Sequence record: MN445185.1
Reading direction: 5' to 3' (one strand)
DNA: 64,000 nucleotides
Positions within the stretch are counted from its first letter, which is position 1, and each line of letters opens with the position of its first letter. Below are positions 1,561 to 4,650 of this stretch, piece by piece. The notes below the pieces were generated by a model that worked only from the letters and a program-made list of their open reading frames with translations, was not told where the DNA came from and ran no database searches. Both the position numbers and the translations under genes were made by a program.

Positions 1561-2048
1561 CGACGATAGCGTTCGACGGAAAAGTCTTAGCTGCTGACGG
1601 TCAGCTGACCCGCGGGTCGAATATCTGCAACCTGAACACCCAGAAGTTATTCATCTGCCCTTCTGACGAGGAATGGTGGATTACTGGTGAACGGATTGTG
1701 GCGTTCGGAGTAAGCGGTGACATCACAGGACAGTTGGCCCTGCTGGAAACGGTCCGCTTGAGACCCGGCTACAAGGGGTTAACACAAAGCTCGCAGTTAC
1801 CTGCGAAGATGGATTTTACTTTCCTGATGCTTTTGGCCTCAGGAAAAGCGATAGTCGGCGGAAAACGTGAAGACGACGTGACGTTGTGGTGGAGTGAAGC
1901 CACACCACCTCTGGCAACCGGAAGCGGTTACGAGTATGCGTTGGGTGCGATGAAGATGGGCGCGAATGCGGTTCGTGCTGTTGAGATTGCGTCCGAATGC
2001 GATATCTACACCGGTGGTGAGATTAGCACTTACGAACTACGGAGGTGA
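1557..2048 (+). CDS. HslV/proteasome-beta-like Ntn (Thr) protease
   Basis: Start at ATG 1557 gives MTTIAFDGKVLAADGQLTRG; Thr1, Asp13 and Lys29 have the same D-K spacing as HslV D17/K33; ATGSG and CDIYTGG motifs. Confidence 0.75.
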   Translation: MTTIAFDGKVLAADGQLTRGSNICNLNTQKLFICPSDEEWWITGERIVAFGVSGDITGQLALLETVRLRPGYKGLTQSSQLPAKMDFTFLMLLASGKAIVGGKREDDVTLWWSEATPPLATGSGYEYALGAMKMGANAVRAVEIASECDIYTGGEISTYELRR

Positions 2049-2051
2049 ATC

Positions 2052-2102
2052 ATGCGGGAGTCAGAAGCACGCAAGCTTGACCCCATCAATCGCCTGCGAT
2101 AA
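2052..2102 (+). CDS. Possible 16-aa small ORF (MRESEARKLDPINRLR)
   Basis: Strong SD GGAGGTG (2041-2047) before ATG 2052; TAA at 2100-2102. Confidence 0.3.
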   Translation: MRESEARKLDPINRLR

Positions 2103-2140
2103 CGGGGTAGCGCATCCGTATAAACACGTTCAAGAATTCT

Positions 2141-2216
2141 AGGAAAGTGACGCAATTGGTAGCGTACCGGTCTCCAAAACCGGCTGTTTAGAGTTCGAGT
2201 CTCTACTTTCCTGCCA
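2141..2216 (+). tRNA. trnW: tRNA-Trp (CCA)
   Basis: Acceptor AGGAAAG/CTTTCCT; anticodon arm CCGGT-CTCCAAA-ACCGG; T arm TAGAG-TTCGAGT-CTCTA; encoded 3' CCA; 76 nt. Confidence 0.97.
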
Positions 2217-2282
2217 CATTTAGCCAACAAGGCCATGATTCAAAGCAGAATGACACCGAATGTCTAACTGCGGAGAATAATC

Positions 2283-2525
2283 ATGAACTTGTATTTGCTA
2301 GAACGAACTGACGATATCGGGTATGATGAATTTGATTCCATAATCGTGGCGGCTCCTACGGAGCAAGCCGCGTGTGCAATTCCTCCCGACCGTGGTCATT
2401 GGATGGACTGCCGCTGGTTACCGAAAGAGCGCTGGGATGAAGGGCTTACCCTGACCGTTACTCTTATCGGTACTACGCACTATCCTGCTGGGACCGTCGT
2501 TCATGAATCGTTCAATGCTGGCTAA
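2283..2525 (+). CDS. Small hypothetical protein, paralogous domain to 985-1560
   Basis: 80 aa, SD GGAG; MNLYLL...SIIVAAPTEQAA pattern. Confidence 0.8.
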   Translation: MNLYLLERTDDIGYDEFDSIIVAAPTEQAACAIPPDRGHWMDCRWLPKERWDEGLTLTVTLIGTTHYPAGTVVHESFNAG

Positions 2526-3300
2526 ACAGTGGGCTTCGGCCCACTAACCCTATTCGAGCCGTGATACTTACTCAGATTGTGCGGGTTGATGTCCCGCATG
2601 AGCCGGTAGCAGCTCAGACCTACGGTAGACCAATAAATCCGTAGCAGCCAGGTACACAAAGCACCAGGTCGCTTGTACAGGATGCTGGGTATCTGACCGG
2701 TCATAACCTCATTCGATACGAGACACGTTTATGCATGAAATACTCCAGTACATCAGGATGTTGATTTCCAACATCCGGTTCTGGGTATTCAGTCATGTTT
2801 GGTTTACAGGCGATGGGTTTTCCCGTAAGGGCCCCACTTACAGACTGGCGTCTCCACGACAACCGTCCCTAGGGGACAGGCAAGCACCGGCCCATTAAGC
2901 CGCTACGCTACGCCTGTAAATCCACAATCTGATAACCGAATGGGATTGAGTTCCCAGTGTTAGGGTGACTGTGTGTCACCGTAGGCGCGGTACCTCATAC
3001 GGCCGGTACGCCACGAATGTACGTGATAGCGGGTGGTGCTTGGAGACGCTAAGACCTGACCTTACGGACAGGCTCAGAAGAAGAAGTCCATCACCTGTAT
3101 TCAGAAATGAATTTAGGTTAATTATTGGAAGTGGCGAAATCACTTACGTGATAACTTAGTAGTATGCAACGAACAATACCAGAGTGACTTTACGAGGTTA
3201 CTGTGGTATATGTCGGTGCGCCGGGCAACGTGTTGCCGCAGATAAGCCCGAGGGAGCTGAGTGCACTAACACACGCCGGGATGCACCGGCACCTTACAAC
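2526..3300 (+). ncRNA. Candidate structured ncRNA region (one or several RNAs)
   Basis: No credible ORF. Stems: 2528-2545 (UUCG loop), 2580-85/2593-98, 2620-25/2639-44, 2756-63/2769-76, 2803-12/2911-20, 2964-69/2975-80, 3212-19/3283-90. Confidence 0.5.
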
Positions 3301-3370
3301 GGCTTTGTAGCTCAGGTAGGTAGAGCAGCCTCTTCGAGGAAGGTCGCTGGTTCGAGACCGGTCAAAGCAA
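3301..3370 (+). ncRNA. tRNA-like RNA lacking an anticodon loop
   Basis: Acceptor GCTTTG/CAAAGC; D arm GCTC-AGGTAGGTA-GAGC; variable loop AGGTC; T arm GCTGG-TTCGAGA-CCGGT; anticodon arm only 13 nt (CCTC-TTC-GAGG); no CCA. Confidence 0.75.
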
Positions 3371-3450
3371 GAGCAGCGAAGTTAGAGGAATTAACACCCG
3401 ACTCATAATCGGATATTTCGACGGTTCGAATCCCTGCCACTTGCTCGCCC
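3371..3450 (+). pseudogene. Degenerate tRNA-Met/Ile2 (CAT)
   Basis: Anticodon arm CCGA-CTCATAA-TCGG; D stem GTTA/TAAC; GGTTCGAATCC T-loop with broken T stem; acceptor GAGCA/TGCTC; ends GCCC rather than CCA. Confidence 0.65.
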
Positions 3451-3452
3451 TA

Positions 3453-3736
3453 TTTGTGTTATCCTTATCCCGAAGGCATTCGAAATAAGACGCGTATCCA
3501 CACACGGGTCAAGGATAACACGAACCACTTCCGCGGTCACCGTGTCCATTGCCGCCTACCTGCATGGGCTGTCCTCCGACACGGTGACTTCGGGCCAAAT
3601 TACAGACCAGGGCCGTTTGGGTTTTTCTTACGCATCCGTCCAGAGCCACCTCGAGCCCTGGTTTGTTCTCCCTTTTCTGTTCCTAGTTAGCCAACTAAAT
3701 CAATTAAGCCTGGTGCGTTGCCCTGGGAACAGAAAA
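3453..3736 (+). ncRNA. Array of four long-stem, large-loop hairpins
   Basis: Stems 3456-66/3511-21, 3536-46/3578-88, 3603-13/3655-65 and 3673-86/3723-36 (11-14 bp); loops 31-41 nt; stems unrelated in sequence. Confidence 0.65.
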
Positions 3737-3828
3737 ACTTATTCGGTTACACACCGAACCCACCCACGAGGGATATGTCGTGGACTACCAATAGAAGCAG
3801 CAATAGTAGAAGTAAGAAGGAAAGCAAC

Positions 3829-4650
3829 ATGTTTACAGTTAAACGTGTGATTGATGGTGACCGCATTATTACCGAACATGAAAAAGTTCGTATCGGTGAC
3901 CGTAAGTCTCGTGTATTCCGCGAGGCATTAAAAATGCTCGAGAACGAGCGATTCGACATTGTTGTCGATGATGAAAAGTTAGCCCTTAATCCGGGGTTAA
4001 AACGCGTTGCCCCTGATGTGCCTGATCCGAACACCATGCATTTGTCTGACTACTGCAGCTGGTCGCACAGATTATATAAAAGTCAGGTTTATGCACACAC
4101 GTATTTGCGGCAGCTTTTCCCCAACCTTATTATCCCCGATTTGGAAACGGTCGAGGTGTTTAACTGCAACGCACGCGAGTTTATTAGCTACGTGCTAGAT
4201 AATAAGGGCAATGCTATCTTGGTACTGGACACAAGTTCCAGTATACCTGATGCTGTGGCTAGCATACGTGGTGAAATCATCGGTTACGGTACTCCCCCAG
4301 AGAAATTAGGCTGGTACAAACCATCTCCTGATAGCGACATGGCGATCATTGTCTACACTCAGGAAGAACTGCAACAAGTCGAATTAGAGCCTGGCCCATC
4401 TATCGAGTTCACTGATGTCCAGGAGCAGTCGCAGTGGATTAACGGTGAGTCTGTTGTTACTGTTTTAAAAGGCGCTCGCCCTGGCGACCGGTCAGTCGAT
4501 GAACTGATTGGCGCAATGTGCATCGAAGAAGAATCTGGATACGATCCTGATAACCAGATCAGTACCGGTGCGTTGTACGAACTGTTTTATAAAGGCGACG
4601 AAGTCTACGTGGTTAACTCTCACGGTAAGACTACCGACGCCCTTCGCTGA
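3829..4650 (+). CDS. Hypothetical protein
   Basis: ORF 3718-4650; better start is ATG 3829 after AAGGA; the upstream extension overlaps the hairpin array. Confidence 0.85.
   Translation: MFTVKRVIDGDRIITEHEKVRIGDRKSRVFREALKMLENERFDIVVDDEKLALNPGLKRVAPDVPDPNTMHLSDYCSWSHRLYKSQVYAHTYLRQLFPNLIIPDLETVEVFNCNAREFISYVLDNKGNAILVLDTSSSIPDAVASIRGEIIGYGTPPEKLGWYKPSPDSDMAIIVYTQEELQQVELEPGPSIEFTDVQEQSQWINGESVVTVLKGARPGDRSVDELIGAMCIEEESGYDPDNQISTGALYELFYKGDEVYVVNSHGKTTDALR

What the first reader, a model, noticed from the sequence alone, without database searches (positions are those of the whole stretch)
3453..3736. Tandem array of four long-stem hairpins with spacer-sized loops
Seen: four consecutive units directly after the tRNA-like pair, separated by short linkers. 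Each has a near-perfect 11-14 bp stem (GTGTTATCCTT/AAGGATAACAC; GTCACCGTGTC/GACACGGTGAC; CAGACCAGGGC/GCCCTGGTTTG; TTTTCTGTTCCTAG/CTGGGAACAGAAAA) around a 31-41 nt loop. The architecture repeats but the sequence does not, so repeat and CRISPR finders would miss it. Two smaller hairpins follow (TTCGGT/ACCGAA, CCACGA/TCGTGG). Inference: a polycistronic small-RNA cassette whose stems are cut by a dsRNA nuclease such as RNase III, or whose loops act as guides, antisense RNAs or decoys against host defence. It could instead be one domain of a large ornate RNA.
Basis: partly seen in the sequence, partly recalled or inferred. Interest (0 to 1): 0.82.

Follow-up and report, generated by a model that had tools for sequence, protein, structure and literature searches.

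The report
Hairpin RNA cassette after phage tRNAs
Four long and two short RNA hairpins at the tail of a jumbo phage's tRNA gene cluster keep their base-pairing and their tip sequences across three phage genera, so they are real non-coding RNAs that no database describes; their function is unknown, and they resemble phage T4's still unexplained RNAC/RNAD.

Summary
The window is Escherichia phage vB_EcoM_EC001, an SPN3US-like jumbo phage.

They are not chance. The same ordered modules follow the last tRNA of the + strand tRNA operon in Seoulvirus, Machinavirus, Erskinevirus and metagenome contigs. Stems co-vary: H1 is 94% paired with 7 of 18 pairs compensatory, H2 is 95% paired with 15 of 23, and H4 is 99% paired. 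The apical sequences stay conserved. Frequent G·U pairs place the RNA on the + strand.

The overlapping ORFs are frameshifted in relatives. No Rfam family matches.

The units are tRNA-sized (64-72 nt) and spaced like neighbouring tRNAs (5-7 nt against 3-9 nt). H1, Hx and H2 are usually followed by CCA. Modules come and go independently, and H1 is duplicated between tRNAs in Machinavirus. Erskineviruses place a terminator after the array.

Best reading: non-tRNA cistrons of the tRNA operon, released by tRNA-processing nucleases as stable hairpin RNAs that act through their conserved tips. The partner is unknown, and no antisense target exists in the phage genome.

The "loops" are structured and conserved, not spacer-like guides. 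This is a new family, closest in kind to T4 RNAC/RNAD.

The parts
3453..3524 (+). H1. A 72-nt extended hairpin with a 14-bp basal stem plus CC/GG pairs. The apical motif is UCCCGRAGRCRUUC...GGUC. The hairpin is followed by CCACU.
   Evidence: H1 is present in every relative examined. Model R2 scores 64-86 bits. It is 94.3% paired and 7 of 18 pairs show compensatory change. RNAalifold predicts the same stem.
3530..3594 (+). H2. A 65-nt hairpin with a 16-17-bp outer stem, an internal loop (CAUU on one side, UCCUCC on the other), a 7-bp inner stem and a CCUGCA hexaloop. It is followed by CCAAAUU.
   Evidence: It is 94.9% paired and 15 of 23 pairs are compensatory. The covariation score is 0.606, against 0.25 for shuffles and about 0.1 for slid controls. 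The apical core GCCGCCUACCUGCAUGGGCUG is near-invariant.
3602..3666 (+). H3. A 65-nt hairpin with a 12-bp basal stem. It occurs only in EC001/SPN3US-type phages and in pEa_SNUABM_29.
   Evidence: There is an A-U to G-C compensatory change between EC001 and SPN3US. H3 is absent from SPAsTU, Machinavirus and Erskinevirus.
3673..3736 (+). H4. A 64-nt hairpin with a 14-bp basal stem. The apical region carries the conserved motif GCCUGGUG.
   Evidence: Over 11 lineages the 10 basal pairs are 99% paired. The stem sequences are unrelated between genera. There are 12 G·U cells and no A·C cells.
3742..3758 (+). H5. A small 6-bp hairpin, TTCGGT/ACCGAA.
   Evidence: It is conserved in Seoulvirus, with TTCGAC/GTCGAA in SPAsTU.
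3764..3783 (+). H6. A small 6-bp hairpin with the conserved loop GGGAWAWG. It is probably the 5' hairpin of the downstream mRNA leader.
   Evidence: The stem co-varies: CCACGA, CCGTGT, CCGCGA and TAGCGG. It is present in Seoulvirus and Machinavirus and absent in Erskinevirus, where a terminator separates the array from the next gene.
3784..3828 (+). An unstructured A/C-rich leader (CAAUAGAAGCAGCAAUAG...) carrying the Shine-Dalgarno AAGGA of the downstream gene.
   Evidence: The motif CAAUAGAAGCA recurs in relatives directly upstream of the ATG.
3829..4650 (+). The downstream CDS (273 aa, phrog_17697, unknown function). It diverges fast and is not part of the RNA cassette.
3301..3370 (+). A degenerate tRNA in which the anticodon loop is mostly deleted.
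   Evidence: Rfam tRNA model, 33.6 bits. ARAGORN does not call it.
3373..3448 (+). A degenerate tRNA-Ile2/Met(CAU)-like gene ending ...GCUCGCCC. H1 starts 4-5 nt after it.
   Evidence: Window 3391-3449 is 85% identical to the 3' part of the tRNA-Ile2(cat) gene of pEa_SNUABM_29. ARAGORN does not call it.
2141..2216 (+). tRNA-Trp(CCA), the only intact tRNA left in this phage's tRNA locus.

Best explanation
H1-H4 are the 3'-terminal, non-tRNA cistrons of the phage's + strand tRNA operon.

Their transcription together with the tRNAs is inferred from the layout. Each unit folds into a very stable, tRNA-sized extended hairpin.

The next step is also inferred. The units are cut apart by the same host enzymes that mature polycistronic tRNA precursors:
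- RNase P at the 5' side of a helix that is followed by (R)CCA;
- RNase E and 3' exonucleases downstream of the CCA.

This would yield discrete, stable small RNAs of about 60-75 nt.

The co-varying basal stems serve only to present and stabilise the conserved apical motifs:
- H1: UCCCGRAGRCRUUC;
- H2: CCUGCA hexaloop plus UCCUCC internal loop;
- H4: GCCUGGUG.

These motifs are the functional surfaces. They most likely bind a conserved protein or structured-RNA partner in trans rather than acting by long antisense pairing.

H5, H6 and the A-rich tract belong to the 5' leader of the downstream mRNA. The biological role of the small RNAs is unknown.
For: Shown:
- The array is conserved in order (H1, Hx, H2, H3, H4, H5, H6) directly after the last tRNA. 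It starts 1-3 nt after the CCA of tRNA-Asn in 15 of the 18 phage-database loci and in metagenome contigs L024 and L025. In pEa_SNUABM_29 it follows a tRNA-like ...ACCA end, and in EC001 and phage 1252 the tRNA-Asn is missing or uncalled. The loci span Seoulvirus, Machinavirus and Erskinevirus.
- Covariation is strong while apical sequences are conserved.
- G·U pairs make up 59 of 427 cells in H1 and H2. H4 has 12 G·U cells and no A·C cells, and Hx has 17 against 1. The + strand folds much better than the - strand. Together these indicate RNA on the tRNA strand.
- The array is better conserved than the adjacent gene. Against SPN3US it is 96.7% identical in DNA while the protein is 84% identical. 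Against pEa_SNUABM_29 it is 72% identical over 347 nt, while the protein is only about 40% identical in two fragments.
- EC001 has lost or degraded most of its tRNAs but kept every hairpin.
- Units are 64-72 nt with 5-7 nt linkers. Adjacent phage tRNAs are 3-9 nt apart, and 61 of 69 encode CCA.
- CCA follows H1, Hx or H2 in 12 of 17 lineage instances, against a 5% background.
- Modules are independent. H3 or Hx can be present or absent, H2 is absent in Erskinevirus, and the H4 tip is deleted in ChrisDB and pEa9. A second H1 copy sits between tRNA-Tyr and tRNA-Asp in Machinavirus, where tRNA maturation must excise it.
- Erskineviruses have a co-varying intrinsic terminator after the array, followed by a promoter-like site. 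There the array is the end of the tRNA transcript and not a 5' UTR.
- RNase P is known to process hairpin and other non-tRNA substrates through the RCCA interaction. Examples are pre-4.5S RNA and the phage C4 and M3 RNAs (PMC11143913).
- T4 places its stable RNAD and RNAC 1 and 6 nt after its last tRNA.
Against: - There are no expression or end-mapping data for any of these phages. Literature searches found none.
- Processing by RNase P or RNase E is inferred only from layout and the CCA motif.
- H3 and H4 lack CCA.
- H1's helix runs directly into CCA without a clear discriminator base in several phages.
- In the window no terminator separates the array from the downstream gene. A role in the 5' UTR of that gene cannot be excluded for Seoulvirus.
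- No partner has been identified.
- The lineages are related, so the counts are not independent events.
- The H2 alignment was fitted to the model structure.
Confidence: 0.5

Rival explanations
1. These are RNase III processing and stabiliser hairpins, like the T7 early R sites. The long interrupted helices would be cut by host RNase III. This would separate the tRNA precursor from the downstream mRNA and leave protective terminal hairpins. On this view the hairpins themselves have no trans function.
For: H2 has the geometry of a T7-type site: a 16-17-bp lower stem, an asymmetric internal loop and a 7-bp upper stem. H1, H3 and H4 offer at least 12-19 stacked pairs. In the window the array lies between the tRNA-like genes and an mRNA with no terminator between them.
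Against: Four to six tandem sites would be redundant. Four different apical sequences are conserved across genera, which a pure cleavage or stability role does not need. In Erskinevirus the array ends at a terminator with no downstream mRNA to separate. RNase III does not explain the CCA tails or the tRNA-like spacing. An isolated H1 copy sits between two tRNAs.
Confidence: 0.15
2. The array is a cis-acting structured 5' leader of the downstream gene (3829-4650). It would control that gene's translation or stability. Alternatively it is one domain of a single large ornate RNA spanning about 2530-3830.
For: There is no terminator or sigma-70 promoter between the array and the gene in the window. 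H5, H6 and the A-rich tract immediately precede the Shine-Dalgarno sequence. The whole 2530-3830 region is dense in conserved structure.
Against: Erskineviruses keep H1, Hx and H4 but end the transcript with a terminator before the next gene. The downstream gene evolves far faster than the array and differs between clades. Modules are gained and lost independently. In SPAsTU and others tRNA genes lie between the upstream conserved elements and the array, so tRNA excision would break any single RNA.
Confidence: 0.12
3. These are trans-acting antisense or guide RNAs whose loops base-pair with phage or host transcripts, as with the P1/P7 C4 RNA or the reader's 'spacer-like' idea.
For: The hairpin-plus-CCA layout resembles the RNase P-processed C4 RNA (PMC11143913). 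The H2 internal loop UCCUCC has the same CCUCC core as the anti-Shine-Dalgarno sequence (from my own knowledge) and could pair with ribosome-binding sites. Short kissing loops cannot be excluded.
Against: No complement of 13 nt or more exists in the whole 240-kb EC001 genome. Complements of 11-12 nt are at chance level. The E. coli BLAST search found nothing (insensitive). The apical regions are themselves paired, leaving only 5-7 nt exposed. The loops are conserved and not variable. There is no Rfam C4 match.
Confidence: 0.1
4. The hairpins are decaying relics of tRNA genes or of other sequence with no present function. Alternatively they act at the DNA level, for example as cruciforms or protein-binding inverted repeats.
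For: They sit among degenerate tRNAs and have tRNA-like length.
Against: They are conserved with compensatory changes across three genera, while the neighbouring tRNAs in EC001 did decay. The tRNA covariance model does not hit them. The 59 G·U pairs would be A·C mismatches in DNA or on the other strand.
Confidence: 0.03
5. The region codes for protein through ORF 3454-3690 (78 aa, TTG start) or ORF 3542-3850 (102 aa, GTG start).
For: ORFs exist, and several GenBank records annotate 'hypothetical proteins' here.
Against: The homologue of ORF 3542-3850 is split between two frames already in SPN3US and SPFM4 (95-97% DNA identity), and again in pEa29 and SPAsTU. ORF 3454-3690 is split in SPAsTU and absent in Machinavirus and Erskinevirus. 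There is no Pfam hit. Annotated CDSs differ in strand and extent between records. Substitutions are compensatory in stems.
Confidence: 0.02

Closest known systems
Phage T4 small stable RNAs RNAD (species 2) and RNAC (species 1)
   Same: These are non-tRNA RNAs encoded at the 3' end of the phage tRNA cluster. They lie 1 and 6 nt after the last tRNA, on the tRNA strand. RNAD is followed by CCA. Their function is still unknown (PMC3014915, PMC9697503).
   Different: No sequence or fold similarity is evident by eye; no formal comparison was run. The T4 RNAs are 119 and 139 nt, and RNAC has a tRNA-like T arm. Here there are 4-6 simple extended hairpins of 55-74 nt, with modular gain and loss. The host phage group is also different (Chimalliviridae-type jumbo phages).
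P1/P7 C4 antisense RNA, and RNase P hairpin substrates in general (pre-4.5S RNA, model hairpin + RCCA)
   Same: A stem-loop RNA whose base helix is followed by a CCA-like tail. It is cut out of a longer transcript by RNase P (PMC11143913).
   Different: There is no Rfam C4 hit and no antisense target in the phage genome. RNase P cleavage has not been shown here.
T7 early-region RNase III sites (R0.3-R1.3)
   Same: Intergenic hairpins of about 60 nt with two helices separated by an internal loop, placed in a polycistronic phage transcript (from my own knowledge).
   Different: The T7 sites are single sites between mRNAs, not tandem arrays after tRNAs. They have no CCA tails. The distinct apical motifs conserved here are not explained by that role.
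Large ornate phage-associated RNAs found next to tRNAs (GOLLD, ROOL)
   Same: Structured non-coding RNA adjacent to tRNA genes in phage genomes (from my own knowledge).
   Different: There is no Rfam match. Here the units are independent, shuffled in content between phages, and separated from the other elements by tRNA genes.

Membership tests
tRNA (RF00005) | Cloverleaf with D, anticodon and T arms, detected by the tRNA covariance model or ARAGORN | tested here: not met
   cmscan at E<=1 and ARAGORN find tRNAs up to position 3370 only. Nothing is found in 3453-3783, and nothing on the hairpins of five relatives.
C4 antisense RNA (Rfam C4) | Match to the family model | tested here: not met
   There is no C4 hit at E<=1 in the window or in five related loci.
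C4 antisense RNA (Rfam C4) | Loop sequences complementary to a target in the same phage | tested here: not met
   The whole 240,200-bp genome was scanned on both strands. The longest complement is 12 nt, and counts are at chance level.
C4 antisense RNA (Rfam C4) | 5' maturation by RNase P that depends on a 3' CCA | not testable with these tools
   Only the CCA motif is seen: 12 of 17 instances after H1, Hx and H2.
T4-type tRNA-cluster small stable RNAs (RNAC/RNAD) | Non-tRNA RNA gene directly 3' of the last tRNA, on the same strand, a few nt away | tested here: met
   H1 starts 1-3 nt after the tRNA-Asn CCA in relatives, and 4-5 nt after the degenerate tRNA in the window.
T4-type tRNA-cluster small stable RNAs (RNAC/RNAD) | Accumulates as a discrete stable RNA in infected cells | not testable with these tools
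   No transcript data were found for SPN3US-like phages.
T4-type tRNA-cluster small stable RNAs (RNAC/RNAD) | Sequence or structure homology to RNAC or RNAD | not tested
   The T4 RNAs are 119 and 139 nt with different predicted folds, and no resemblance is evident by eye. No direct alignment, BLAST or covariance-model comparison with the window hairpins was run.
CRISPR array, solitary repeat unit or type III antitoxin repeats | Direct repeats of one sequence, tandem or spaced | tested here: not met
   There are no direct repeats between units and no tandem repeats.
RNase III site (T7 R-type) | About two helical turns of coaxial dsRNA, often interrupted by an internal loop | tested here: inconclusive
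   H2 (16-17 + 7 bp) and H1 (about 18 bp) fit geometrically. Cleavage is not testable here.
Intrinsic terminator | GC-rich hairpin followed by a U tract | tested here: not met
   There is no + strand terminator in 1900-4000. Real terminators follow the array only in Erskinevirus.
Large ornate RNAs (GOLLD, ROOL, OLE, HEARO) | Match to the family model, and a single integrated multi-domain fold | tested here: not met
   There are no Rfam hits. Modules vary independently and are separated from other elements by tRNA genes.

The most novel reading that the evidence does not exclude
The CCA-tailed hairpins (H1, Hx, H2) would be acceptor-arm mimics. They would be made in bulk from the tRNA operon to occupy or mislead a tRNA-directed host factor, such as an immune nuclease or toxin that recognises the tRNA acceptor stem or CCA end, or a tRNA-processing or repair enzyme. 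On this reading H4's conserved UGGUG (UGGCG in Machina-type phages) is a CCA-end-binding motif, analogous to the T-box UGGN bulge or the P15 loop of RNase P RNA. The array would then be an RNA-based counter-defence or tRNA-pool-management cassette that travels with the phage's replacement tRNAs.
Probability: 0.1. Interest if true: 0.85.

Novelty: new variant of a known kind. Interest (0 to 1): 0.6.

Why it matters
Phage tRNA clusters are currently read as codon-usage aids or as replacements for tRNAs destroyed by host defence nucleases. In a whole clade of nucleus-forming jumbo phages the tRNA operon also carries a conserved set of non-tRNA structured RNAs. These RNAs are kept even where the tRNAs themselves have decayed, as in EC001 and SPN3US. 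That suggests the RNAs, and not only the tRNAs, are a selected product of the locus.

The finding provides a second, comparative-genomics-rich example of the T4 RNAC/RNAD phenomenon, which remains unexplained. It comes with clear mutational handles, because stems and conserved tips can be changed separately. It also corrects mis-annotated 'hypothetical proteins' in many GenBank records.

Tried and rejected
- Rfam with permissive thresholds, on the window and on five relatives, found only tRNAs and tRNA look-alikes.
- An antisense-target search in the 64-kb window and then in the whole genome piece by piece gave chance-level results only.
- BLAST of the array against 5,426 E. coli genomes found no hit. 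The test is insensitive to short seeds.
- A scan of 185,579 bacterial and archaeal genomes for the exact H2 apical 21-mer gave three hits. All lie in unrelated GC-rich stretches with no RNA family, where the 21-mer reads in frame as AAYLHGL, which fits chance matches in coding DNA. ORFs there were not checked.
- IMG/VR scans by pattern and by protein returned only Caitlin and SPN3US themselves.
- A search for extra H1 or H2 copies elsewhere in EC001 found none.
- I looked by eye for resemblance of H1 to SRP/4.5S RNA, of H6 and H1 to type I-E CRISPR repeats, of the H4 tip to a tRNA D loop, and for loop-loop kissing between H4 and Hx or H3. In each case only 4-6-nt similarities appeared, they are not conserved across genera, and I dropped them.
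- The complementarity between the H1 loop and the H2 3' arm (I6) is not conserved in pEa29, so I rejected it.
- Literature searches for SPN3US transcriptomes or small RNAs returned nothing relevant.
- Pfam and PHROG scans of the neighbouring proteins gave only 'unknown function'.

Full report
**Identity of the window.** Bases 2000-4000 are 100% identical to Escherichia phage vB_EcoM_EC001 (MN445185) at the same coordinates. The next relatives are SPN3US-like Salmonella phages at 95-98% identity. EC001 is a 240-kb Seoulvirus jumbo phage. Between an HslV-like peptidase gene (ending at 2048) and a CDS starting at 3829, most of the sequence has no convincing ORF. The exception is the conserved 80-aa ORF at 2283-2525. 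ARAGORN finds only tRNA-Trp at 2141-2216. Rfam adds a crippled tRNA at 3301-3370. A second tRNA-like sequence with a CAU anticodon loop lies at about 3373-3448. Its 3' part is 85% identical to the tRNA-Ile2 gene of a relative.

**The observation.** The six hairpins are exactly as described:
- H1: 3453-3524
- H2: 3530-3594
- H3: 3602-3666
- H4: 3673-3736
- H5: 3742-3758
- H6: 3764-3783

Linkers are 5-7 nt. The + strand of 3440-3830 folds with z = -6.15, and no shuffle out of 100 does as well. The - strand gives z = -2.95. No direct or tandem repeat links the units. Uninterrupted stems of at least 11 pairs occur about 1.4 times per kb elsewhere in the window. Four abutting ones are unique. The 'loops' are not open: each contains further helices.

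**Relatives.** Distant BLAST hops, annotated regions and a protein-anchored metagenome search recovered the locus in:
- Seoulvirus: SPN3US, SPFM4, SPLA3, 1252, pEa_SNUABM_29, SPAsTU;
- Machinavirus: Caitlin, pEa4, ChrisDB, pEa9, Machina, pSal-SNUABM-04, pEa10, pEa6;
- Erskinevirus: Asesino, phiEaH2, Stratton;
- three SPN3US-type metagenome contigs (L021-L023) and two more divergent ones (L024, L025).

In nearly all of them H1 begins 1-3 nt after the encoded CCA of tRNA-Asn, the last gene of a + strand array of up to ten tRNAs. pEa_SNUABM_29, EC001 and phage 1252 differ only in which tRNA or tRNA relic precedes H1.

Domain parsing shows an ordered but modular set.

| Phage group | Modules present |
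|---|---|
| EC001 type and pEa29 | H1-H2-H3-H4-H5-H6 |
| SPAsTU | H1-Hx-H2-H4-H5-H6 |
| Caitlin, pEa4 | H1-H2-H4-H6 |
| ChrisDB, pEa9 | the same, with the H4 tip deleted |
| Machina type | H1-H2'-H4-H6 |
| Erskinevirus | H1-Hx-H4, then other small hairpins and a strong intrinsic terminator |

The Erskinevirus terminator co-varies between Asesino and phiEaH2 and is followed by a promoter-like site.

**Structure is selected.**
- H1: across 13 distinct sequences, 94.3% of cells pair and 7 of 18 pairs show changes on both sides. Slid controls pair at 39-52% with at most 2 such pairs. RNAalifold finds the same stem.
- H2: the sequences were aligned with a covariance model built from five seeds. Pairing is 94.9% and 15 of 23 pairs are compensatory. 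The covariation score is 0.606, against 0.25 for shuffles and about 0.1 for slid controls. This alignment is fitted to the structure, which flatters it somewhat. However, the outer arms are simply unrelated in sequence between clades and still fully complementary.
- H4: basal stems are 99% paired over 11 lineages, with different sequences in each genus.
- Hx is 98% paired, and the H6 stems co-vary.

By contrast the apical parts are the conserved parts:
- H1: UCCCGRAGRCRUUC...GGUC;
- H2: GCCGCCUACCUGCAUGGGCUG plus UCCUCC;
- H4: GCCUGGUG;
- H6: GGGAWAWG.

**Strand and coding.** G·U pairs are frequent. They account for 59 of 427 cells in H1 and H2. H4 has 12 G·U cells against 0 A·C cells, and Hx has 17 against 1. 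On the other strand, or in DNA, these would be mismatches. The functional molecule is therefore + strand RNA, the tRNA strand.

The counterpart of 3542-3850 is split over two frames already in SPN3US and SPFM4. The counterpart of 3454-3690 is split in SPAsTU and gone in other genera. GenBank CDS calls over the hairpins disagree in strand and extent. The phrog profile of the downstream protein carries a 74-residue N-terminal extension that the 273-aa product does not match. That extension probably comes from homologues annotated with start codons inside the hairpin region.

**Selection strength.** The array is 96.7% identical between EC001 and SPN3US, where the adjacent protein is 84% identical. 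It is 72% identical to pEa_SNUABM_29, where that protein retains only two fragments at about 40%. EC001-type phages have lost or degraded tRNA-Tyr, Glu, Asp, Ile, Gln and Asn relative to SPAsTU, yet they kept all the hairpins.

**Clues to biogenesis.** In relatives, 61 of 69 tRNAs encode their CCA. Adjacent tRNAs are 3-9 nt apart. The hairpins in the window are 64-72 nt and 5-7 nt apart, so they are laid out like further tRNA cistrons. CCA lies within 0-2 nt of the last paired base of H1, Hx or H2 in 12 of 17 lineage instances, against a 5% background. H3 and H4 lack it.

Machinaviruses carry a second H1 copy, plus other tRNA-sized hairpins, between tRNA-Tyr and tRNA-Asp. Maturation of the flanking tRNAs must release it. 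RNase P is known to cut hairpins followed by RCCA and natural non-tRNA substrates, including pre-4.5S RNA and the phage C4 and M3 RNAs (PMC11143913).

From this I infer co-transcription with the tRNAs and tRNA-type maturation into separate small RNAs. None of it is shown experimentally.

**What they do.** I found no evidence for antisense action.
- The apical regions have no complement of 13 nt or more in the entire EC001 genome. Counts of 11-12-mers are at chance level.
- There is no E. coli BLAST hit.
- Exact matches of the H2 21-mer in bacteria look like chance hits in GC-rich coding DNA.
- H1 and H2 are single-copy in the genome.

Only 5-7 nt remain unpaired in each tip. A protein or a structured-RNA partner therefore seems more likely than long base-pairing. 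H5, H6 and the A/C-rich tract go with the downstream mRNA leader. They are absent where a terminator intervenes.

**Comparison with known systems.** No Rfam family matches. The closest known kind is T4's RNAD and RNAC, which lie 1 and 6 nt after the last T4 tRNA. Their roles are still unknown (PMC3014915, PMC9697503). They share position and probable biogenesis but no evident sequence or fold. The C4 RNA of P1/P7 is a mechanistic analogue for processing only. T7 RNase III sites are a geometric analogue for H2. GOLLD- and ROOL-type single large RNAs are disfavoured by the modularity.

**Verdict.** The interpretation as a polycistronic small-RNA cassette is supported. The guide/spacer and ornate-domain readings are not. 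The function is open. This is a previously undescribed family of conserved structured RNAs embedded in the tRNA operon of SPN3US-, Machina- and Erskine-type jumbo phages.

Noticed in passing
window 2874-3102 (+): A second conserved structured non-coding element of about 230 nt lies upstream of the tRNA-like genes. It is 72-83% identical across all three genera and metagenome contig L024, and it usually sits at the 5' side of the tRNA array. RNAalifold predicts 49 pairs, 13 of them with compensatory change. It includes an invariant AUGGGAUUGAGUUCCCAG hairpin and a 70-nt hairpin at 3029-3098. There is no Rfam match.
   Followed up: partly
window 3176-3291 (+): Two more stable hairpins lie at 3176-3209 and 3211-3291, the second ending ...GCACCGGCA-CC. 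They are conserved in SPAsTU and pEa_SNUABM_29 but with little variation, so covariation is uninformative.
   Followed up: partly
window 3301-3448; L002 1445-2506: The EC001 tRNA locus is eroded. One tRNA has a deleted anticodon loop, and a tRNA-Ile2/Met(CAU)-like gene is no longer called. The Tyr, Glu, Asp, Ile, Gln and Asn genes present in SPAsTU are absent.
   Followed up: partly
L008 646-934; L009 1055-1343; L011 946-1023; L002 2108-2190: Relatives carry further tRNA-sized non-tRNA modules between tRNAs. They include a second H1 copy and a conserved 78-nt three-way-junction element (GGGAACAUUGUCACC...GGGUGUUCCC) followed by CCA. The larger gaps between tRNAs, 83-464 nt, are where these elements lie.
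   Followed up: partly
L008 2050-3084; L018 1373-1609; window 3718-4650: Database CDS annotations run through the hairpins. Machina gp19 starts inside H1. SPFM4_00252 is on the opposite strand. The 310-aa TTG ORF extends the 273-aa protein upstream. These are probably mis-annotations.
   Followed up: partly
L008 1748-1841; L011 1213-1333; L016 1148-1267: Unusually long 'tRNA-Ile(aat)' calls of 94-121 nt in Machinavirus and Erskinevirus suggest an intron or insertion in a tRNA gene.
   Followed up: no
window 2283-2525 (+): A small conserved ORF (80 aa, phrog_5444, unknown function) sits between tRNA-Trp and the non-coding block. It appears to be a real gene embedded in the RNA locus.
   Followed up: no
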